Of a stretch of DNA of 64,000 nucleotides, positions 9,848 through 56,664 are shown piece by piece. The stretch lies in assembly GCA_001179505.1 (NCBI GenBank), contig CDMY01000791.1, positions 186,001-250,000 of the forward strand. Reading direction: 5' to 3'. A model generated the notes under the pieces. That model made no database searches, had not been told where the DNA came from, and saw nothing but the letters and a program-made list of their open reading frames with translations. The first letter of the stretch is position 1, and each line of letters starts with the position of its first letter. The position numbers and the translations under genes are program-made. The stretch is from Vitrella brassicaformis CCMP3155 (lineage: Eukaryota; Protista; Chromerida).

Positions 9848-10335
9848 GGCAAGATACTCGAGGTGGGCCACGACGGTGTTGGTGGTGTTGGTGGTGGGAG
9901 GTTCCCCACCAGGAGCAATCGGTCGGCCGGGAGGGTGGGTTGCATTCGTTGGTCGTTTTGGTGAAACCAGGGGCGAGATTGCCTTGCTTATTGCCACTTA
10001 CTCGGGCACAGTCTTGCAGCTCGAGTGAGTCCTTCCGCGAGTCAGTCAGTCAGTCAGTCGTGTGTGTGAGGACATTCATCGTCTTTTTGCTCTCGTGTGT
10101 GCATTGGGGGGCGGGGGGTGGTGTGGGGGATGTGTGGGAGGGGCAGGGTAAAGGTGTGTGTACATATTTGATGGACAGTGGTCGACAGACAGGTCTTCTC
10201 AGTGAATGCATCAATCCATACACACATGGACGGACCAGAGTCCTGTCCACCCAACGCACCCACTCACTGCTGCCCCCCATGCACTGCGTTGCACGCACCG
10301 CCTGACTCGTTGGTTGATATACGTCACATCACACG

Positions 10336-13300
10336 TCAGGCAGCCAGGAAGGCCTCATCCATCCGGCCATCTCTGATGACCGCACCCCGCTCCCCTGCCC
10401 ACTGCACCCATGGCCCCCAGTCCCTGGAGTCCTGACGCAGCGTCGACACGTCACCAAACACAACCAGACCTGACACATACACATACACCCACATCCACTG
10501 GCCACACTCGCACCCACCCCTCCAGACACCCAGAGAGCTTTGCTATACATGTCACAGATGTGGTGGCTGACCTCTGCGGGCCCGTGTGAGCATGACGTTC
10601 ATGCGTCGGGGGTCCCTGAGGAACCCGAGCGCGCCGGCGGCGTTGGCCCTGACAGCTGAGAAGAGGATGATGTCCTTCTCCATCCCTTGGAAACCGTCAA
10701 TCGTGTCAACCTGCACACCCGACAAGGCACCCTGCAGCCACGCAGAGGAGGTCGAGATCCCGGCCTGATGCAGGCCGATTGGAATACACCCAGGCAGACC
10801 GAGAGGTGTGCTGTTGCGTGACATTTGTTGTGGTGGTTGGTTTGCCGACCTGCATGTCCCGCAGCGCATCGATGAGCAGACGCTTCTGCGCGACGTAGGG
10901 CGTCAATACGCCGATCTGTGAACACAAACAGATCGGTGCACCTGCGCGGACCCTGCGTGTGTCGCGGTGGCTGACGTGCGTACGTACCTCTGTCGGCTCA
11001 ACAGATCTATGCTCCAGGGCCTGCACCAACACCCGCAGCAGCGGAGCGATCTCCCTGCACACAACAGCGGTGAGTGCAGATGCAGCAAAAGAAACCTCGT
11101 GTCTGTCTGTTTGTGTGGTGGGTGTGGATCTGCATGCCTGCGGTTCGCTCTGGAGGTGCCCGAGGCCTCTTCCCCACAGCCAGCGACATCGACTAGGGCG
11201 ACTCTGCACTGCCCCCCCTGCGGCCAGTGCAGCCCGGCAATGGGCGGACGCTCGTCGTCACCCACACCTACACACACACGGGAAGGAAACGACCATGAGC
11301 AGCATCGACCAGCGAGCGAGGGCATCCGGCTTCCTCCCTCCCTCCCTCCCTCACCGGCATCCTTGAGCCGCCCGTCGTAGAAATGTCTGTTGGGGAAGTC
11401 CTGATACACCCACACCCACACACCGCATACACATGAAATAAACATCGCGCAGACGCACTGCCTGCAGTGCACTGACTGACCGCGATGGATCGGTGCATCC
11501 TCCTCTGTGTCTCTAGCATGATGGCTTCGGTGACGTTGCTGTTGAGCAGCCGCTCGAACAGCGACACCTCCAGACCACGAGCGGCAGCACTCTCGCACAG
11601 GATCGTGGGCGGCAGCTGCTTCTGGTCACCTGAGTTAGGAACGCACAGGCACACATGTGTGGTGTTTGATTGGAGGGCTACGTGCGGGGAGGGAGGTACC
11701 TACCGATGAGCACTATCTGGTCGACGCCGCGGCCCAGCGGGACCAGGCTCGACGGCTCTGAAGCAGCCAGCCGACCGAGTGTGCGTGTGTTGGTGTGCGT
11801 GTTAGGTGGGGTGGGTGCTGACCGATGGCCTGTGCGCATTCGTCGATGAGGACCTTTGAGAAGGTGACTTCATCGAACATCTCGTGCCCGCTGCCGATGC
11901 ACGTCGCTATGATGATCGTGTGACGCCTCACAGCCTGGCATAAGACGACAATGTCACATAAGTGAGTGAGTTGGTGCAGGTAGGATTCCTCCCCTGTAGT
12001 CAGCTGACCTCTTTGATGAGCAGGAATCTCCTGGCGTTGGCCTCCTCCCGCCTTCCCGACCGCCGAAGCTCCACATACTGGTCGTAGCCACGCATGTCTG
12101 TGTATTTCCACCCTCACACAGGCAGCACCCATACTCAGGTGTTGTGTGTGGAGGGGGGGCCGGCGCACTCACCTTTAATGGCATCGTCGTGGAGGTCGCT
12201 GTCTCGGAAGGCCCCCACACGCAGTGACGCAATGCCTGCACAGCAAACACGGGGATGCCATGCATGCAGGTTCTTGTGTTGTGTGGTGTGATTTGGTTGT
12301 GTGAGGTACTTCGTTTCCGCAGGCCGGCCGAGATGTTGTCGGCGGCGATGTTGGAGTCGGCAACGGCTAAGATCCTCTGACCTGACCACACACAGACGAA
12401 GCGAGGGAGCAAGGAAGATCACACACACGGTCCACCCGAGCCTTCTCGTGTGCTCCCTCCGTTACTGCTGTCGAGTCGCTTCCACGCGTCGATGATGGCG
12501 CACGCAGTGTGGGTCTTGCCAGTGCCGGGCGGACCTGCACACACATTCCTTCGTGTCCATCTGTGTGTGTGGGGGGGGGGGGGNNNNNNNNNNNNNNNNN
12601 NNNNNNNNNNNNNNNNNNNNNNNNNNNNNNNNNNNNNNNNNNNNNNNNNNNNNNNNNNNNNNNNNNNNNNNNNNNNNNNNNNNNNNNNNNNNNNNNNNNN
12701 NNNNNNNNNNNNNNNNNNNNNNNNNNNNNNNNNNNNNNNNNNNNNNNNNNNNNNNNNNNNNNNNNNNNNNNNNNNNNNNNNNNNNNNNNNNNNNNNNNNN
12801 NNNNNNNNNNNNNNNNNNNNNNNNNNNNNNNNNNNNNNNNNNNNNNNNNNNNNNNNNNNNNNNNNNNNNNNNNNNNNNNNNNNGGGGGGGGGTGCGTATG
12901 TACCTTGGACTAGAGTGAGTCTATTGGTGAGTGCGGACTGCACGGCCCGCTGCTGTGGCTCCGTCAGCGGCATGCTCACTCCCAGATTGCGCAACAGACC
13001 CTCGGGGCACTGCAGGGGAGCACCCTCGTCCGATGCTGCTGCTGCAGTCGAGGCCTCCTCATGTGTAGCCAGGTGGTCGCTGATCTCACTGGCCGCCGTC
13101 TGCATCTCCTTGCCGGCCTTGAGCGTCTCCCTGCGAGTGTTGTTGTGCATGTTCTGCCACAGCTGTGTCTCGAAGGAGGCGCCGTCCTTGCTCCGCCCCT
13201 CCCAGAAGGGGTGGCCCCTGAAACCCTCGTACGACATGTGCTGACGCAGATCCTCGGGCATGCTCACACCTACACACGTACGCACAGATGCACTGATGGG

Positions 13301-16300
13301 TGTGTGCGAATGTGTGTGTGGTGCAGGGACCTAGGTACCTACCTTGTGCGACGGTAGGTGCGTGTTGGTGTGTGGGAGAGAGGAGCAGGAGGCGCATCTC
13401 AGGCTGATAGCGGAAGGGCGGCTCGCCTTGCTGCACGCACCATCGGACGGACAGAGGCAACATACATACAAAGGGGATGTGCCAATACACACAGACACAC
13501 AGGTCCGTACCAGTGGCGGCATTCTCTTGGCGGCGAGTGCCTTGATGGCCTGCGTCATGCGCAGCCACGAGACGTGCGACGCGATGTGGTACACACTGTA
13601 CTCGTCGTGACTGATGAGGGCAGGGTCCCAGAATGGCTCCTCTGACGCACACTTGAGGTTGACGACCAGACTCCCGCCGTCCTTGACCAGAGATGTCACA
13701 CGACAGAAGAAACACGAACCCTGACATACACCACACACACACACAGGCAGAGAGGAGCCATGAATGACAGACATGACGGTTCTCTCGCTCACCCATGGGT
13801 CTTGTGTCTTGGCCCTGGTGGGCATCAGACACAAAATGTCTCCCTCCTGCACACACACACACAGACACACAGACACCATGCGCATGTCACATACACGGAT
13901 GTACACGTGTGCAGTCAGTCATCGCTACGATACCCTGAGTGGTTGTTCGGCGAATTTCCTGAGCTGTGTGCCGTCCTGTATGAATGTGTGCAGCCGCACC
14001 ATCGGATACACCGCCTCCTCGCAACTCATCACCAGACAACTGCACACACGCGCACGCACACGGGAAGTGATAGACAACGCACCGGAGATGCACGTAACAT
14101 GGCTCGCTCACGCGTCGGGGTAGAAGGTCCTCTTCTCGTCAACACGCTGAGCGAATGCACACACGCGGAGCATGCAGCGACATGAATGCAGAACGAGGCG
14201 TACGTACCTGTTGCAGCTCCTCGGTCCTCTCGAAGGCCATCAGCCCCCTCATAGAACGGAAGTAGTCATCTGTGGGACACACACACACACACACACGTCG
14301 GGCCGGGCTGGTATTGTATTGACTGCCCCCATGCGCCTTTATCTATCTGTCCGTACATGCGTGGAGGTCAGGGAAGCAGTCGGGGGAGAACGGCACGTGC
14401 ACAAGCTGGTCAAGCACCTGCACACACAGACACACAGCCACACATTCATACAGTATGGCAGACCTCCACACACTCCTGTCCGTCCACGCTGCTGTGACCC
14501 TGTTTGCCAGCGAGGTGCTCCTGGCCGATATGGCGGGGCATTCGTCCAGCAAAGACTCCCACACGTCCACTCCCATCACACGACCACCGTCACCTACACA
14601 CACACACACACACACACACCCCGGGATACTCACACCTGCCGATTCATTCCTGCCTTGTCTCGATGCATACGGTCGTTTGCGGCCGTCTTGATGGCGACCA
14701 TGACGTTCTGCACCAGCGGTGGGAGCGGTCCGTTGGGCAGTGCATCGGCCTCCAGCAACGACACGTGCGCCAGCAACATCCGCCACACCTGCAGGCAGGC
14801 TTGTTGGTGCGAGTATGAGTCATATGCCGTCCATCCCTGTGTTGTGTTGTGTTGGGGTTGCGGCGTACGTGTGGTAGGAAGATGGCCCAGGTGTGTGGTG
14901 GGCTGCCGTGGATGAGGCTGCACGTGCGGTTGACCGCATCGGCCATGTCCTGATCCAACGACACACACACATTTTTTGCCTATCTACGGGCCACTCGCAC
15001 TAGCCCACTTGTCTGAGCAGTGCCTCCTTTATCGCCGTCGCCTCTGCACGATGCTGCGGGTCGATCGCCGCCTGCAGACCTGCCGACACGCACACACATA
15101 TGAAGACCATGTGCACAAAAAAGAGAGAAAAGGCTCCGTCCACGCGCACCTGTTTGGTGCAGCATCTTGATGGCTGCCTCGGCGCGCGCCACTGCTTTGG
15201 AACCCCCAATGCCTGACGCTGTCATCTGCCGCACACACAACAAAGGGGTGTATGCGTTTCATGAAAGTGCGGCCTGCCTGTCTGTGTGTATGTCGGTCAC
15301 AGACTGACTGCGTTGGTCCTTCCGGCGAGGTTTTTCCACTTCCACTCGAGGAGGGCGCGGTAGCCGGCGTCATGGGCAACCTCACTCCACACAGGCTGAT
15401 ACCTCACACCACATTTGGGTGGGTATGCACAGATGGGGCCTGGCCCGCCTGTGTTTCTTTGCCTGCCTGGTCTATGTATGTTACCTCAATCTGCAGCCTT
15501 TGTGTGATGAGCTGGTGCTCTTTGTTGACCTCACCGGCGTCCTTCCTCGACAGACGGGAGGGGGATATCCCGCTGCTCAGACTGGCCGCATGCTGATGCG
15601 ATTCACACACACAACACACACAACACACATTCCCACAGACAGACACAGAAATGGGTGTAAGTGTGGAAGCCTTGTGTAGTGTCGTGTGCGTTCGTTTGTG
15701 TGGTAGGCATGCTTCACTCACGTTGGCGGCCTTCCGTGTGGCCTCCTGCCGCATCCTCTCCTCCTTGTCTGCCGTCTGCCGCACCGCTATGTCACTCAAC
15801 ACCACACTCTTGAACTGAACCCACCGACCGACAGCAACCAGCCAGCAACACGAACAAAAGCGATAAGTACCTCATCCGCTGTGTGCCCCTCCCTCCCTCC
15901 CTGCCTCCCTCCCTCCAGGCGGCCCACCTTGCAGGCCTGCATGTACATGTTCTTGAGAGCCTGGACCTCCGCATCGCCCGCCGTGGTGCCCTGGCCGTGG
16001 GCCTCCAGCTGCCCCAGCCCCTCGTCTGCCGTCGGGATGCGCCACTGCACGCGACACACGTGCTGACCCCCGCTGATCTCACGGTCCTGGGTCTCCTCGG
16101 CCCGCAGCCGCAGACGGAGGTTGTTGGCCATCCATCGGGTCAACTGGGATAGCTCCTCTGCCTCGGGCTCGCACCCCTGCATGCGCCATGTCCTGTGCAG
16201 CACCTGCCTCGCCGCATGACGACGCGCCTCGCGCTTGTTGGCACCCTCGCCGCTCACCTGCACTCACCACAACCTCTTCTCCCTCTCTGGTTGATGTTTT

Positions 16301-16786
16301 CATGTTGATTCACTCACTGACCGCAATCTTTTGGTTGGCCCGCCCCGTGATGTGCCACGTAATGGTGTGTGTGAAGCCGCCCCTCCGCCCCTTGTCCACC
16401 CTCTCGTGGGCCTCCACAGCCAACACACCGCCGCCCCGGCCGCCCACACCGACACCCACATTGGCCTGCAGGCACTGCAACCGGATCGTGTAGGCCACCA
16501 AGACGTTCTCGACGTCGACGGCGCATCGGTACATGGCCTCCAGGTCAAACGCAGACGAAAGAGGAGTGGCAGCAGGGGGAGTGGCGACATCGATGCCGCT
16601 CGCAGATGGGCGTGTGAGAGCTGCAGGGGAGGGGGGCAGTGGCGGCAGCTGCTGCTGCTGGACAGAGGAGCTCTGGTGGCGGCGGCCGCGAGTGCACCAC
16701 TGGAGAGCGGGCCTGGCTGCTCGTGCTGACAACTGATCTGGGGAGAAGAGGTCTCTGAAGGCAGAGAGGATCGCCCGAAGCCTCAT
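10336..16786 (-). CDS. UPF1/DNA2-NAM7-like superfamily 1B helicase with three N-terminal dsRBD-like domains; in-frame upstream ATG at 17011 is an alternative start
   Basis: Motifs QGPPGTGKT (I), AVADSNIAAD (Ia), IIIATCIG, VLIDECAQ (II), LIGDQKQLPP (III), SLFERL, QRRMH, YDGRL, IGVLTPYVAQ, TIDGFQGMEKD (V), RMNVMLTRARRG (VI). Upstream exons carry G.G..K..A...AA..L signatures. A 300-N gap lies in one intron. Confidence 0.85.
12584..12883. other. Assembly gap (300 N) inside a poly-G run; equal-sized gaps at 44279-44578, 51090-51389, 52623-52922 and 56365-56664
   Basis: Directly visible; identical length suggests placeholder size. Confidence 0.95.
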
Positions 16787-17105
16787 AACGGTAGCAGAGC
16801 AGCCCAATGCAGAGATCTCCCGCAACTGGACATCAAAAGACAGATCATCACTTCCGATGAGTCCTTTCGATGTGTACACCGCATCTTGGTTCACCTGCCG
16901 GAACGCGATGAATCTGAAGGTCTGCGAGCTCAGCTTCAAAGCTCGCAAAAGGACAACGAAGGAGGAGGAGGGAAAACCACGGCGCGCGTGTGGCCTCTTG
17001 GCGATCGGCATCTGCCTTGATATAGACTCCAGTACTGCGGCTTTCCAGATGAGAGCAGAAGGCCGCTCTTTGGTGCCTGTGACAGCGCCGCCAGATCAGC
17101 GCAAC
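16787..17105. promoter_or_regulatory. Putative bidirectional promoter with the motif in both orientations (16923-16930, 16940-16947)
   Basis: Between divergent helicase and membrane-protein starts; depends on ATG 16786 being the real start. Confidence 0.4.
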
Positions 17106-18015
17106 ATGGGAGGCGGCGAGCAGCAGCTGGCGCCCTCCAGCCCTCCACCAGACACCAGCAGCACACACAGCGGCGCAACCGACCCGCTCGCATCATTCCC
17201 ATGGGACCCCGCGGAGATGGGTAACTAACTACTCACTGACACGTACACCGCCCGCAAGGAGCATACCACGGTGTGGTGACAGCGTCGCTCGGTGTACGGG
17301 CGTACTCTGATGTGCTGTGTGCTGTGTGTGTGGTGTGTGTGCAGAGTATTTGTCGTTGGACGACACTGGTGCGACTTATCCCTACGGCCTTCGGTGGCGA
17401 GTGCTGATCCCCAGCCTGGTGTTGATCTGTGTGGGGTGCGTCATGTTTGTCAAGGCGACGGTGGACCAGCACTACGCCGACACGTTCCACAACTGGAACG
17501 TCTACGGCATCCCCATCCCCCACGCATTCCTATTCCCCTTCCTCGCAGTCGTCAGCGTCGTCGTCTTCGCAATGGCCATGGCCCACCTCTACTACAAGGT
17601 GGTCCTGCGGCCCACACTCGTGCTGCGCCCAACCTTCGTGTGTGTGCCGTCACTGCGGTGCTTCCTGAGGGTGCGGGTGCGGGTCGTGCACTTCAACACC
17701 GTCATCAGCATGACTCGCCTCAGGCGGCGGGGCACCTCCTGCTTGGGGCTCAGCCAGCGCATCGAGGTGGCCTACAGGAAACCCTCCACATCTGTCCATT
17801 CGCCATCCACCTCTTCCAACATCCTCTCGCACATCGGCGGACTCACGAGCGGGTTGGTGGCACCTGACAGCAGCGAGTCGAGTGTGCGCGACCGTGTGAT
17901 GATCGACTCGCTGCAGCTGCCGTCTGATAAGGATTTCGACGACGTGTGGAGCTTTCTTCTGTCGCAAGCCAACCCGCAGAGGGAGGAATCGAGACTCACT
18001 GCCAGTGACCCGTGA
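17106..18015 (+). CDS. Small membrane protein with two transmembrane helices, 2 exons, unknown function
   Basis: ATG 17106, intron 17221-17344 joins in frame (M|E YLSLDD); hydrophobic segments VLIPSLVLICVGCVMFV and AFLFPFLAVVSVVVFAMAMAHLYY; stop 18013-18015. Confidence 0.6.
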
Positions 18016-44278: not shown

Positions 44279-44599
44279 NNNNNNNNNNNNNNNNNNNNNN
44301 NNNNNNNNNNNNNNNNNNNNNNNNNNNNNNNNNNNNNNNNNNNNNNNNNNNNNNNNNNNNNNNNNNNNNNNNNNNNNNNNNNNNNNNNNNNNNNNNNNNN
44401 NNNNNNNNNNNNNNNNNNNNNNNNNNNNNNNNNNNNNNNNNNNNNNNNNNNNNNNNNNNNNNNNNNNNNNNNNNNNNNNNNNNNNNNNNNNNNNNNNNNN
44501 NNNNNNNNNNNNNNNNNNNNNNNNNNNNNNNNNNNNNNNNNNNNNNNNNNNNNNNNNNNNNNNNNNNNNNNNNNNNNNCGTCAGATGTGTCGCTTGCCT

Positions 44600-50452: not shown

Positions 50453-53400
50453 CCCTGGTGCACTGCAGGTGCCTCCCTCCCTCCCCCCTCCCCCCTCCCA
50501 CGCCACTGGTGCCGTTGTCAGTCATTTCCCTCTGGCCTTTGCACGACGACAGGTGGGCAGACTGACTGACAGACACAGACAGACAGGGAGGGCTGAGGGG
50601 GGGCGAGTAGCTGACAAATACACGCATCCATCCATCCATCCATCCATCAGTCAGTCAGTGTGGGTCCTTCACTGGTGCACGTGAACATCGGATCGGTCGC
50701 CGAGGGCAAACACACTTAAACCATTGCTGGCAAAGCAGCATAGGGAGGGAGGGAGGGAAGCCATACATCCACAGGTCGTGTGAGTGACTGACTGAGTGAG
50801 TGAATGGCAAGTCGTCCTATCGACAGATGATTGGGGCCGCCGCCGTCGGCAGAAAGACGGCGACCCCTCAGCCCGACACAAATAACACGACAGACAGCAA
50901 GGAAGCGGCAAGAACGGATCAAAACTTGGCTGCCTGGCGTCTGTCCAGGTCATGAGGCAGCTGGCCTGGACGACCTGTGTGTGTGTGGTGAGATGGATGA
51001 GCAACAAACAAATACATCCGGTGGGTGGGAGTATAGCAGAGTGTTCATACAGACAGACAGCCACACTGACACACACAGCTGGCGGCACANNNNNNNNNNN
51101 NNNNNNNNNNNNNNNNNNNNNNNNNNNNNNNNNNNNNNNNNNNNNNNNNNNNNNNNNNNNNNNNNNNNNNNNNNNNNNNNNNNNNNNNNNNNNNNNNNNN
51201 NNNNNNNNNNNNNNNNNNNNNNNNNNNNNNNNNNNNNNNNNNNNNNNNNNNNNNNNNNNNNNNNNNNNNNNNNNNNNNNNNNNNNNNNNNNNNNNNNNNN
51301 NNNNNNNNNNNNNNNNNNNNNNNNNNNNNNNNNNNNNNNNNNNNNNNNNNNNNNNNNNNNNNNNNNNNNNNNNNNNNNNNNNNNNNNNNTCCCTGGTGCA
51401 CTGCAGGTGCCTCCCTCCCTCCCCCCTCCCCCCTCCCACGCCACTGGTGCCGTTGTCAGTCATTTCCCTCTGGCCTTTGCACGACGACAGGTGGGCAGAC
51501 TGACTGACAGACACAGACAGACAGGGAGGGCTGAGGGGGGGCGAGTAGCTGACAAATACACGCATCCATCCATCCATCCATCCATCAGTCAGTCAGTGTG
51601 GGTCCTTCACTGGTGCACGTGAACATCGGATCGGTCGCCGAGGGCAAACACACTTAAACCATTGCTGGCAAAGCAGCATAGGGAGGGAGGGAGGGAAGCC
51701 ATACATCCACAGGTCGTGTGAGTGACTGACTGAGTGAGTGAATGGCAAGTCGTCCTATCGACAGATGATTGGGGCCGCCGCCGTCGGCAGAAAGACGGCG
51801 ACCCCTCAGCCCGACACAAATAACACGACAGACAGCAAGGAAGCGGCAAGAACGGATCAAAACTTGGCTGCCTGGCGTCTGTCCAGGTCATGAGGCAGCT
51901 GGCCTGGACGACCTGTGTGTGTGTGGTGAGATGGATGAGCAACAAACAAATACATCCGGTGGGTGGGAGTATAGCAGAGTGTTCATACAGACAGACAGCC
52001 ACACTGACACACACAGCTGGCGGCACAAACAGGGGTATCTGTCTGTCTGTCTGTCTGTGTCGGCACATTCGGCCGCCCCGTCGCCCTTTGTTGTGGGGGC
52101 CCGCCAGTGCGTGAGTGCTCAGGCAGACAGGCAACGAAGGCTGTGGTGCGTACACACCCAGACAGACAGACAGACAGACAGGTTTGTATGCATGTCCGTG
52201 AAGCGCATCCACACACTTGTACAGACAGACGGCTGGTGCCACTTCGCCTGTGGGTCGGGGGCACGTGCACTCGCTGGCTGCCTCGGCGGGGGATGTGTGT
52301 ATGCTCAGAGGTACATGAGATGTTGGAAAACGGGACAGAGGCCGTCCGATCGATCGATTGACATGATGGGATCTCTCTCTCTCGCTCGCTTCACTCTGTC
52401 CTCGAGACCCCCCACAACAGCCAGCCACACCAGCCAGCCAGCCAGCCACACCAGCCAGCCAGCCTCCCATCGGTTGTGTATGAATCGACCAGCCTGTCAG
52501 CAACGGCACTGTACTGCCGGCACGACCGACCAGTATCGGTGCGCATCTGTGGACCAGCCAATACGATCCACATCCATCCATCCAGCCATCCATTCATCCA
52601 TCGGCCACAGCAACAAGGCACANNNNNNNNNNNNNNNNNNNNNNNNNNNNNNNNNNNNNNNNNNNNNNNNNNNNNNNNNNNNNNNNNNNNNNNNNNNNNN
52701 NNNNNNNNNNNNNNNNNNNNNNNNNNNNNNNNNNNNNNNNNNNNNNNNNNNNNNNNNNNNNNNNNNNNNNNNNNNNNNNNNNNNNNNNNNNNNNNNNNNN
52801 NNNNNNNNNNNNNNNNNNNNNNNNNNNNNNNNNNNNNNNNNNNNNNNNNNNNNNNNNNNNNNNNNNNNNNNNNNNNNNNNNNNNNNNNNNNNNNNNNNNN
52901 NNNNNNNNNNNNNNNNNNNNNNGGATCAAAACTTGGCTGCCTGGCGTCTGTCCAGGTCATGAGGCAGCTGGCCTGGACGACCTGTGTGTGTGTGGTGAGA
53001 TGGATGAGCAACAAACAAATACATCCGGTGGGTGGGAGTATAGCAGAGTGTTCATACAGACAGACAGCCACACTGACACACACAGCTGGCGGCACAAACA
53101 GGGGTATCTGTCTGTCTGCCTGTGTCGGCACATTCGGCCGCCCCGTCGCCCTTTGTTGTGGGGGCCCGCCAGTGCGTGAGTGCTCAGGCAGACAGGCAAC
53201 GAAGGCTGTGGTGCGTACACACCCAGACAGACAGACAGACAGGTTTGTATGCATGTCCGTGAAGCGCATCCACACACTTGTACAGACAGACGGCTGGTGC
53301 CACTTCGCCTGTGGGTCGGGGGCACGTGCACTCGCTGGCTGCCTCGGCGGGGGATGTGTGTATGCTCAGAGGTACATGAGATGTTGGAAAACGGGACAGA

Positions 53401-56364: not shown

Positions 56365-56664
56365 NNNNNNNNNNNNNNNNNNNNNNNNNNNNNNNNNNNN
56401 NNNNNNNNNNNNNNNNNNNNNNNNNNNNNNNNNNNNNNNNNNNNNNNNNNNNNNNNNNNNNNNNNNNNNNNNNNNNNNNNNNNNNNNNNNNNNNNNNNNN
56501 NNNNNNNNNNNNNNNNNNNNNNNNNNNNNNNNNNNNNNNNNNNNNNNNNNNNNNNNNNNNNNNNNNNNNNNNNNNNNNNNNNNNNNNNNNNNNNNNNNNN
56601 NNNNNNNNNNNNNNNNNNNNNNNNNNNNNNNNNNNNNNNNNNNNNNNNNNNNNNNNNNNNNNNN

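What the first reader, a model, noticed from the sequence alone, without database searches (positions are those of the whole stretch)
10336..16786. UPF1-like SF1B helicase fused to three dsRBD-like domains with an organelle-type presequence
Seen in sequence: a complete SF1B helicase core preceded, on the same strand and spliceable in frame, by three segments with the dsRBD alpha-beta-beta-beta-alpha ending. These are GFTHTITWHI...VSGEGANKREARRHAARQVL (about 16200-16400), VCRVQWRI...EAHGQGTTAGDAEVQALKNM (about 15940-16060) and PVWSEV..YRALLEWKW...MTASGIGGSKAVARAEAAIKML (about 15160-15400). The N-terminus from ATG 16786 (MRLRAILSAFRDLFSPDQLSARAARPALQWCTRGRRHQSSS) is R/S/A-rich like a mitochondrial presequence. 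Established knowledge: UPF1, MOV10/SDE3 and SEN1 lack dsRBDs, which are typical of SF2 helicases such as DHX9 and of Dicer partners. Inference: a distinct dsRNA-handling helicase, possibly for organellar RNA (myzozoan mitochondria have fragmented rRNAs) or for RNA silencing. Motif QRRMH replaces the usual QYRMH.
Basis: partly seen in the sequence, partly recalled or inferred. Interest (0 to 1): 0.8.

Follow-up and report, generated by a model that had tools for sequence, protein, structure and literature searches.

The report
Triple-dsRBD UPF1-like helicase, probably mitochondrial
This is one real, expressed 31-exon gene of the alga Vitrella brassicaformis for a 1,249-residue UPF1-type RNA helicase that carries three double-stranded-RNA-binding domains. 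It belongs to a barely studied family shared with malaria and Toxoplasma parasites and dinoflagellates, and the family most likely works on mitochondrial RNA.

Summary
A public 3,928-nt transcript contig and two spliced RNA runs join every piece into one minus-strand mRNA of 31 exons with a 3,750-nt coding sequence. Its translation is identical to the public protein CEM33748.1 (UniProt name "DRBM domain-containing protein").

The N gap at 12584-12883 lies inside intron 18. The mRNA reads straight across it, from LVQ-G into PPGTGKT.

All three N-terminal segments are dsRBDs.
- **D1:** a family profile hits solved dsRBD proteins at E 9e-11.
- **D3:** the same test gives E 4e-5.
- **D2:** it is degenerate, but profile comparison relates it to D1 (95%) and D3 (93%), and it folds alpha-beta-beta-beta-alpha.

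The helicase core is complete and closest to Upf1, but it lacks the Upf1 zinc-knuckle domain.

The architecture is not unique to Vitrella. The same D1-D2-D3 plus helicase layout occurs in Toxoplasma, Eimeria, Plasmodium (the PF3D7_0703500 family), Babesia, Theileria, Rhytidocystis, Perkinsus and dinoflagellates. I found no paper that notes the dsRBDs.

Mitochondrial action is likely but indirect. Relatives have Arg-rich, acid-free leaders, and PF3D7_0703500 co-purified with the mitochondrial protein PfRAP21. A role in RNA silencing is unlikely.

The scan had not noted this family on other DNA.

The parts
10336..16786 (-). Coding sequence: 31 exons, 1,249 codons plus TGA. Exons (high..low): 16786-16322, 16257-15928, 15814-15722, 15592-15485, 15395-15309, 15225-15150, 15079-15009, 14949-14869, 14788-14671, 14593-14499, 14417-14357, 14269-14208, 14146-14112, 14039-13934, 13846-13793, 13720-13511, 13430-13343, 13269-12904, 12534-12466, 12381-12310, 12235-12173, 12097-12009, 11934-11823, 11757-11704, 11629-11481, 11400-11355, 11267-11138, 11054-10988, 10915-10850, 10764-10572, 10469-10336.
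   Evidence: Transcript contig L001 against the window, splice-site resolution, and identity to public protein P0138.
10156..16765 (-). Extent of the public transcript contig L001, including a 180-nt 3' UTR (10156-10335). The 5' end is not reached.
   Evidence: RNA runs X1 and X2 give the same joints.
16664..16786 (-). Residues 1-41. A basic N-terminus (8 Arg/Lys against 2 Asp in the first 40 residues) that looks like a mitochondrial presequence.
   Evidence: Composition and leaders of relatives. Targeting was not tested.
16183..16507 (-). dsRBD 1 (residues 94-180), split by intron 1 (16258-16321). It has a 12-residue Gly-rich insert and keeps a basic patch (KREAR) at the start of helix 2.
   Evidence: Pfam dsrm scores 23.0 bits against a cut-off of 23, E 1.2e-4, on P0138. 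The family profile against PDB hits Staufen1 at 9e-11 and TARBP2 at 1e-9.
15806..16152 (-). dsRBD 2 (residues 191-268). It is degenerate and has no basic patch at the start of helix 2.
   Evidence: AF2 model of exon 2 has pLDDT 66 and alpha-beta-beta-beta-alpha order. Foldseek best match is Loqs dsRBD3 at E 0.016. VIA gives Z 6.7 to Staufen dsRBD5. hhalign to D1 gives 95.4% and to D3 93.4%.
15075..15544 (-). dsRBD 3 (residues 313-388), spread over exons 4-7. It carries the GxGxSKxxAR signature.
   Evidence: The family profile against PDB hits TARBP2 at 3.9e-5 and Staufen1 at 3.5e-4. The D3 HMM scores 1.2e-25 on P0138.
13616..13951 (-). Barrel-like accessory region before the core (residues 591-649).
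   Evidence: Only a weak SEN1_barrel match, E 0.02.
11598..12967 (-). Helicase RecA1 half (AAA_11, residues 815-999). Motif I GPPGTGKT spans intron 18 (12512-12904), motif Ia is at 12350-12367, motif II DECAQA at 11827-11844, and motif III is at 11607-11704.
10447..11573 (-). Helicase RecA2 half (AAA_12, residues 1008-1213). QRRMH is at 11493-11507, motif V at 10672-10704, and motif VI at 10576-10608.
   Evidence: QRRMH is invariant in 33 orthologs.
12535..12903 (-). Intron 18, which holds the 300-N assembly gap (12584-12883). Its true length is unknown.
   Evidence: The joint 12532->12902 appears in X1 and X2. L001 crosses it with no unaligned letters. It is a GT-AG intron.
11055..11137 (-). 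Intron 27, the only GC-AG intron.
   Evidence: and a loose end of an X1 contig at 11137.

Best explanation
The gene encodes a nuclear-coded, ATP-driven SF1B (UPF1-like) RNA helicase with three dsRBDs in front of the motor.

Proposed mechanism:
- D1 and D3 keep the dsRBD signature and part of the basic patch. They dock the enzyme on A-form RNA duplexes without reading sequence.
- D2 has lost the basic patch. It more likely serves as a protein-contact or spacer module, as the third dsRBD does in TRBP and Loquacious.
- The motor then loads on an adjoining single strand and moves 5'->3', as its relatives Upf1, IGHMBP2 and Sen1 do. It would unwind the duplex or strip proteins from it.

The most likely place of action is the mitochondrion. 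There the protein would help to process, stabilise or clear the many small rRNA pieces and the precursor or antisense RNAs typical of myzozoan mitochondria, together with RAP and heptatricopeptide proteins.

Shown here: one gene and one mRNA, the domain order, intact motifs, and family membership. Inferred: RNA as the substrate, the polarity, the roles of the individual dsRBDs, and the mitochondrial location.
For: - **One mRNA and an exact gene model:**
- **Complete motor:** AAA_11 at 3.7e-39 and AAA_12 at 2.9e-51 on P0138. All motifs are present. For the core of ortholog P0002, the nearest solved relatives are Upf1/NAM7 at 4e-68, then SMUBP2, Sen1 and DNA2.
- **dsRBDs:** (22 of 33 orthologs reach dsrm at E<=0.01, best 6.9e-8). 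AF2 of the Rhytidocystis ortholog gives three alpha-beta-beta-beta-alpha units, and the top Foldseek hits are TARBP2 at 2.6e-8, Loqs-PB at 1.4e-7, R2D2 and MLE.
- **Conserved family:** D1-D2-D3 HMMs hit all the apicomplexan orthologs tested, and at least D1 or D3 in most Perkinsus, dinoflagellate and unnamed relatives (P0038-P0077, P0115; all three domains in about a third). They hit none of P0078-P0114 or P0116-P0123. On a tree of the helicase core alone, 33 of 34 dsRBD-bearing rows fall on one side of a branch with SH-aLRT 99.
- **Location:** most dinoflagellate-type relatives begin with Arg-rich leaders free of acidic residues for about 20-47 residues, with no signal-peptide-like stretch apparent by eye, leading into D1. 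The first acidic residue is at position 63 in Toxoplasma, 46 in Besnoitia, 56 in Rhytidocystis and 96 in P. malariae. PF3D7_0703500 was reproducibly enriched with mitochondrial PfRAP21 and is predicted to be mitochondrial (PMC8917122). Perkinsus has the family; from my own knowledge it has no plastid genome.
Against: - Nothing in this family has been localised by experiment, as far as I could find.
- The Vitrella leader has Asp at positions 12 and 17, and its start codon is not covered by RNA. The frame stays open upstream to 17095, with an ATG at 17011.
- The authors of the PfRAP21 pull-down themselves call for validation. Their mitochondrial prediction rests on MitoProt II.
- PF3D7_0703500 was also found in the mRNA-bound proteome and in UPF2 pull-downs, though in a control too (PMC10449492).
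- Plasmodium orthologs have a hydrophobic stretch near residue 15-33 that could be a signal anchor.
- The AF2 models have modest confidence (mean pLDDT 51 and 66). The VIA Z of 6-7 is below the tool's own caution line of 8.
- Substrate and polarity are inferred by homology only.
Confidence: 0.55

Rival explanations
1. It is a cytosolic mRNA-surveillance or decay helicase. This would be a one-chain version of the Staufen-UPF1 partnership: the dsRBDs find duplexes in mRNAs and the UPF1-like motor remodels the mRNP for decay or translational control.
For: The core is closest to Upf1. The D1 profile's best solved match is Staufen1. PF3D7_0703500 is in the mRNA-bound proteome, and its peptides appeared in UPF2 pull-downs (PMC10449492).
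Against: The UPF2 peptides were also seen in a control, and the authors judged compensation for UPF1 unlikely. The protein has no Upf1 zinc-knuckle domain. Acid-free, Arg-rich N-terminal leaders in many independent relatives are not expected for a cytosolic protein.
Confidence: 0.2
2. It is a plastid (apicoplast) RNA helicase that handles duplexes formed by polycistronic and antisense plastid transcripts.
For: Plasmodium and Rhytidocystis orthologs have a hydrophobic stretch followed by an acid-poor region, which resembles a two-part plastid leader. Rhytidocystis even has FVAP after that stretch.
Against: The Vitrella and dinoflagellate-type leaders have no signal-peptide-like hydrophobic core. 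The family is present in Perkinsus, which from my own knowledge lacks plastid DNA. The Plasmodium partner PfRAP21 is mitochondrial.
Confidence: 0.1
3. It is an RNA-silencing cofactor, a Dicer or RdRP partner like SDE3, MOV10 or Hrr1.
For: dsRBDs are typical of Dicer partners. The three-domain model's best fold matches are TARBP2, Loqs and R2D2.
Against: The family is retained in Plasmodium, Babesia and Theileria, which from established knowledge lack RNAi. A mutagenesis study cited by McHugh et al. suggested it is essential in P. falciparum. The leaders look organellar.
Confidence: 0.05
4. It is an annotation or assembly artefact: two neighbouring genes, a dsRBD protein and a helicase, wrongly read as one.
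For: JGI's gene caller split transcript L001 into two ORFs. RNA contig depth is lower over the 5' exons in run X1.
Against: The split comes from a 10-N scaffold join with a 9-nt duplicated overlap; the genome is continuous and in frame there. Depths are similar in run X2. A complete transcript ORF from Rhytidocystis and gene models from more than 30 species have the same order.
Confidence: 0.02

Closest known systems
PF3D7_0703500 family of Apicomplexa ('erythrocyte membrane-associated antigen' in Plasmodium, 'AAA family protein' in Toxoplasma, 'regulator of nonsense transcripts-related' in Babesia and Theileria)
   Same: Orthologous family. It has the same D1-D2-D3 order, the same middle region and the same UPF1-like core, with invariant QRRMH. 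The core of the Vitrella protein is 56% identical to that of Toxoplasma.
   Different: The Vitrella protein is short, with only about 90 residues before D1. Plasmodium has about 640-860 residues there and a long insert between D2 and D3. The published work calls the family a helicase only and does not mention dsRBDs (PMC10449492, PMC8917122, PMC4630921).
Upf1/NAM7 (nonsense-mediated decay helicase)
   Same: It is the nearest solved helicase core (E 4e-68 for the ortholog's core). The SF1B motifs are the same, and there is a barrel-like insert before the core.
   Different: There is no zinc-knuckle CH domain for Upf2. Motif IV reads QRRMH instead of QYRMH. Three dsRBDs are added. McHugh et al. 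place the family in a clade separate from Upf1.
DHX9 / MLE (RNA helicase A)
   Same: N-terminal tandem dsRBDs feed duplex RNA to a helicase motor. The MLE dsRBDs are among the best sequence and fold matches.
   Different: Those motors are SF2 DExH enzymes that move 3'->5'. They have two dsRBDs rather than three and are unrelated in the core.
TRBP / Loquacious / PACT (three-dsRBD Dicer partners)
   Same: Three dsRBDs, of which one is degenerate and used for protein contact. They are the best fold matches over all three units.
   Different: They have no enzymatic domain. In them the third dsRBD is the degenerate one; here it is the second.
SUV3 (mitochondrial degradosome helicase)
   Same: The proposed role is the same: removing or remodelling duplex RNA in mitochondria.
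   Different: SUV3 is an SF2 helicase without dsRBDs. The likeness is functional and inferred, not tested.

Membership tests
UPF1-like SF1B helicases (Pfam AAA_11 + AAA_12) | Both RecA halves match above the curated cut-offs | tested here: met
   On P0138, AAA_11 scores 135.5 bits and AAA_12 174.3 bits against a cut-off of 27. The halves are also found exon by exon in the window.
UPF1-like SF1B helicases (Pfam AAA_11 + AAA_12) | Motifs I, Ia, II, III, IV, V and VI are intact | tested here: met
   GPPGTGKT, AVADSN, DECAQA, GDQKQLPP, QRRMH, TIDGFQGMEKD and RRMNVMLTRAR are all located.
UPF1-like SF1B helicases (Pfam AAA_11 + AAA_12) | 5'->3' translocation on single-stranded nucleic acid | not testable with these tools
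   Inferred from the nearest solved relatives.
Upf1 proper (NMD factor) | N-terminal Cys/His zinc-knuckle (CH) domain that binds Upf2 | tested here: not met
   No UPF1 zinc-binding family appears among the Pfam hits of P0138 at E<=0.05. McHugh et al. report the same for PF3D7_0703500.
dsRBD (Pfam dsrm, PROSITE DRBM), domain 1 | Sequence match to the dsRBD profile | tested here: met
   P0138 scores 23.0 bits, exactly at the cut-off of 23, E 1.2e-4. Toxoplasma scores 24.0 bits. The family profile against PDB gives Staufen1 at 9.1e-11, and 57 of the 59 matched sequences at E<=1 are dsRBD-containing proteins. UniProt names the protein a DRBM domain-containing protein.
dsRBD (Pfam dsrm, PROSITE DRBM), domain 3 | Sequence match to the dsRBD profile | tested here: met
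   There is no single-sequence Pfam hit. The family profile hits TARBP2 at 3.9e-5 and Staufen1 at 3.5e-4, and every listed hit is a dsRBD protein.
dsRBD (Pfam dsrm, PROSITE DRBM), domain 2 | Sequence or fold match to dsRBD | tested here: met
   The direct match is weak, Loqs at E 0.011. hhalign to D1 gives 95.4% (E 1.8e-8) and to D3 93.4%. The AF2 model of window exon 2 has alpha-beta-beta-beta-alpha order, and dsRBDs lead the Foldseek and VIA lists.
dsRBD, RNA-binding type | Basic patch (KKxAK) at the start of helix 2, and actual dsRNA binding | tested here: inconclusive
   D1 has KREAR, where the family consensus is KKxAKK. D3 has SKAVAR. D2 has no basic residue there. Binding itself cannot be tested with these tools.
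Mitochondrial matrix proteins with a cleavable presequence | N-terminal amphipathic, basic, acid-poor leader that is recognised and imported | not testable with these tools
   Only composition could be examined: 8 Arg/Lys against 2 Asp in the first 40 residues, with clearer leaders in relatives. No targeting predictor or localisation data were available.

The most novel reading that the evidence does not exclude
The fusion is an ancient invention of the myzozoan ancestor: a mitochondrial helicase guided by dsRNA. On this reading it is a core, essential part of the machinery that lets these organisms live with a shattered mitochondrial genome, meaning dozens of rRNA pieces, recombining or inverted-repeat DNA and abundant antisense RNA. 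It would work beside RAP and heptatricopeptide proteins and do a job that SF2 helicases such as SUV3 do elsewhere.
Probability: 0.35. Interest if true: 0.7.

Novelty: new variant of a known kind. Interest (0 to 1): 0.5.

Why it matters
How apicomplexans, chromerids and dinoflagellates make working ribosomes and mRNAs from fragmented mitochondrial genomes is an open question, and few of the enzymes are known.

This family is a named, testable candidate. A mutagenesis study suggested it is essential in P. falciparum. It has no close human counterpart with this layout. It can be tagged and depleted in Toxoplasma or Plasmodium.

It also shows that an SF1B motor can be coupled to dsRBDs. So far that coupling is described only for SF2 helicases and Dicer-type enzymes.

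For Vitrella itself the result is ordinary annotation: the public gene model is correct.

Tried and rejected
- **Self-joined protein.** Exons were searched by reference. The spliced sequence was taken only from public records, L001 and P0138.
- **Search with exon 2.** The representative search gave no self hit and one real relative, P0002. The other three hits were low-complexity chance matches.
- **Word search with the ortholog's N-terminal region.** It found only the query itself.
- **phmmer of the ortholog's N-terminal region against PDB.** It found nothing useful. Family profiles were needed.
- **MAFFT of short exon pieces against the ortholog.** It misaligned them, so that alignment was not used for folding.
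- **Weak Ketoacyl-synt_C hit on D2** (E 0.002-0.009). Rejected as chance: it is below the cut-off, covers 29 residues, and fits no context.
- **TgmRHel, a Toxoplasma mitochondrial RNA helicase in a 2026 preprint.** It is a DEAD-box protein and not this family.
- **Experimental location for the Toxoplasma ortholog.** The hyperLOPIT supplement lists TGME49_211690 as 'AAA family protein'. I could not show that this is the ortholog, and the classification file is cut. No claim is made from it.
- **My first hand-made exon model.** It was wrong at three junctions (exons 9-11). The transcript corrected it.
Full report
**What is there**

The minus strand between 10336 and 16786 holds many short open pieces separated by GT/CA-rich stretches. 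Scanned exon by exon and by reference, the 3' two-thirds match the two halves of UPF1-like helicases. AAA_11 matches several exons. AAA_12 matches at E 2e-21 on 10555-10902. Among the 5' pieces only one gave a weak dsrm hit, E 0.079, on the helix GEGANKREARRHAARQVL.

**One gene, and the gap**

I laid two spliced RNA runs (X1, X2) and two DNA runs on 11101-17100, a stretch of 6,000 letters. This gave eleven joints with CT..AC ends on the plus strand, which are GT..AG on the minus strand. One of them is 12532->12902, seen in both RNA runs, and it jumps over the N gap at 12584-12883. The gap is therefore intronic.

The word search later returned P0026, a 1,028-residue protein that is 100% identical to window exons. 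Its contig, L001, is a 3,928-nt transcript from a JGI data set. L001 maps from 16765 to 10156 in 31 collinear blocks, nearly all at 100% identity. No transcript letters are unaccounted for at the gap.

JGI's caller split L001 into two ORFs. The cause is a scaffold join inside exon 2, 10 N followed by a 9-nt repeat of the preceding letters. The genome is continuous and in frame at that point.

Resolving the block overlaps by splice signals gives 29 GT-AG introns and one GC-AG intron, mostly 59-129 nt long, and a CDS of 3,750 nt.

The cluster of P0026 also holds P0138. This is CEM33748.1 of Vitrella brassicaformis CCMP3155, 1,249 residues, which UniProt names 'DRBM domain-containing protein'. 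P0138 is identical to both L001 translations and to window exon 1. The first 21 coding bases and the 5' UTR are not covered by any RNA contig I saw. A different transcript contig ends at 16960.

**The helicase**

On P0138, AAA_11 scores 3.7e-39 and AAA_12 scores 2.9e-51. No Upf1 zinc-knuckle family is found. Motifs I to VI are intact. QRRMH in place of QYRMH is real and is invariant across 33 orthologs. For the core of the ortholog P0002, the nearest solved sequences are yeast and human Upf1 (4e-68 and 5e-64). SMUBP2, Sen1, DNA2, ZNFX1 and Aquarius follow.

**Are the three segments dsRBDs?**

*Single sequences.* These are borderline. D1 reaches 19.5 bits on the transcript piece and 23.0 bits on P0138, exactly the Pfam cut-off. 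D2 and D3 give nothing.

*Family-level evidence.* This is clear.
- Twenty-two of 33 orthologs reach dsrm at E<=0.01, the best at 6.9e-8.
- I cut D1, D2 and D3 out of 25 family members and aligned each set.
- The D1 profile against all PDB sequences hits Staufen1 (9.1e-11), TARBP2 (9.8e-10), MLE, Loquacious, DGCR8, ADAR2, R2D2, DHX9, PACT and PKR. All but two of the 59 sequences matched at E<=1 are dsRBD-containing proteins.
- The D3 profile hits TARBP2 (3.9e-5) and Staufen1 (3.5e-4), again only dsRBD proteins.
- The D2 profile reaches only Loquacious at E 0.011. Profile-profile comparison nevertheless relates D2 to D1 (95.4%, E 1.8e-8) and to D3 (93.4%, E 2.5e-7).

*Fold evidence.* This agrees, at modest confidence.
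- AF2 of residues 295-600 of the Rhytidocystis ortholog has mean pLDDT 51, and about 55-76 over most of the three units. It gives three alpha-beta-beta-beta-alpha units.
- The best Foldseek matches to that model are the three-dsRBD proteins TARBP2 (2.6e-8) and Loqs-PB (1.4e-7), then R2D2, MLE, ADAR2, NF90 and PKR.
- AF2 of window exon 2 alone has pLDDT 66. It gives the last helix of D1 and a full alpha-beta-beta-beta-alpha D2.
- The best matches to D2 are protein-contact dsRBDs: Loqs dsRBD3, DRB7.2/DRB4, Staufen dsRBD5 and the TRBP-Dicer interface. Foldseek E is 0.016 and VIA Z is 6.2-6.7. Both values are below the tools' comfort lines, so I count them as support only.
- A language-model look-up also put dsrm clusters first, at score 0.86, which is only a lead.

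*Basic patch at the start of helix 2.* D1 (KREAR) and D3 (SKAVAR) keep part of it. D2 has none.

**The family**

The only relative found with the N-terminal exon was P0002, a complete 1,555-residue transcript ORF of the apicomplexan Rhytidocystis pertsovi. It aligns collinearly with the window from D1 to the C-terminus.

Searching with its middle region and core returned orthologs in Neospora, Besnoitia, Cyclospora, Eimeria, Toxoplasma, nine Plasmodium clusters (six named species), Theileria and Babesia. The next tier came from dinoflagellates, often with a C-terminal WW domain, and from Perkinsus.

HMMs of D1, D2 and D3 hit every apicomplexan ortholog in the same order. They hit at least D1 or D3 in most of the P0038-P0077 tier (all three domains in about a third) and in P0115, and none of the other lower-ranked helicases.

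A quick tree of the helicase core alone puts 33 of 34 dsRBD-bearing rows on one side of a branch with SH-aLRT 99. Vitrella sits unresolved beside a well-supported apicomplexan clade. The tree is unrooted, several rows have long branches, and many rows are of unknown taxon. I take it only as consistent with one origin of the fusion.

**Where it acts**

I could not run a targeting predictor. By composition, the Vitrella N-terminus has 8 Arg/Lys and 2 Asp in its first 40 residues. The comparative picture is stronger.
- Most of the 19 dinoflagellate-type and unnamed relatives examined begin with leaders that are Arg-rich and free of acidic residues for roughly 20-47 residues. I saw no hydrophobic signal-peptide core in them by eye. 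The leaders run into helix 1 of D1.
- The first acidic residue is at position 63 in Toxoplasma, 46 in Besnoitia, 56 in Rhytidocystis and 96 in P. malariae.
- In P. falciparum, PF3D7_0703500 was one of three proteins reproducibly enriched with the mitochondrial RAP protein PfRAP21, and it is predicted to be mitochondrial. The authors ask for validation (PMC8917122).
- McHugh et al. found PF3D7_0703500 as the second-best UPF1 hit. They report no CH domain, that a mutagenesis study suggested it is essential, that it was identified as mRNA-bound, and that it falls in a clade apart from Upf1 (PMC10449492).
- A survey lists it simply as 'Helicase' (PMC4630921).
- None of these papers, nor four further searches, mention dsRBDs in it.

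**Reading**

The best-supported mechanism is a duplex-RNA-docked 5'->3' SF1B helicase acting on mitochondrial RNA. I put this at 0.55. The architecture itself I put above 0.9.

The rivals are a cytosolic role like the Staufen-UPF1 partnership (0.2), a plastid role (0.1), RNA silencing (0.05) and an artefact (0.02). RNA silencing is unlikely because lineages without RNAi keep the gene.

**Novelty**

The gene and its domains are already in public databases, and the Plasmodium ortholog has been noticed as a UPF1-like helicase and a candidate mitochondrial protein. What I did not find described is the three-dsRBD plus SF1B layout as a conserved, myzozoan-wide family. I rate it a new variant of a known kind, of moderate interest.

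The same scan noted an XRN nuclease with two dsRBDs elsewhere in this genome (s1-248691). I did not test that finding.

Noticed in passing
window 44279-44578, 51090-51389, 52623-52922, 56365-56664: Four more 300-N assembly gaps lie in the window.
   Followed up: no
L001:504-529 (window about 16190-16198): The public transcript contig has 10 N plus a 9-nt duplicated overlap inside exon 2. As a result JGI's gene caller split the ORF, and the database protein P0026 is truncated to 1,028 residues starting at a GTG.
   Followed up: yes
window 11055-11137 (-): A GC-AG intron, the only non-GT donor among the 30 introns of this gene.
   Followed up: partly
window 16960-18015: A separate, more abundant transcript contig (X1 record 4, 1,305 nt) ends at 16960. 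A plus-strand ORF at 17317-18015 looks like a membrane protein. The two genes may be head to head and share a short promoter region.
   Followed up: no
window 16786-16894 (-): An out-of-frame upstream ATG at 16894 opens a 33-codon ORF whose stop overlaps the main ATG. Separately, the main frame stays open upstream to 17095, with an ATG at 17011. Whether either lies in the mRNA depends on the unmapped transcription start.
   Followed up: partly
window 11406-11423, 13732-13880, 14415-14444, 15270-15294: Short CA/GT-rich intronic stretches attract many DNA contigs from elsewhere in the genome, with depth up to about 190 against about 23. They look like dispersed simple repeats.
   Followed up: no
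P0039-P0060 (dinoflagellate-type relatives): Many relatives add one or two WW domains after the helicase. Perkinsus P0045 and Effrenium P0115 are joined to unrelated domains (CwfJ, isocitrate lyase), possibly through merged gene models.
   Followed up: no
P0002 residues 20-38: The Rhytidocystis ortholog has a hydrophobic stretch followed by FVAP, a motif I recall from dinoflagellate plastid transit peptides. This may be coincidence.
   Followed up: no
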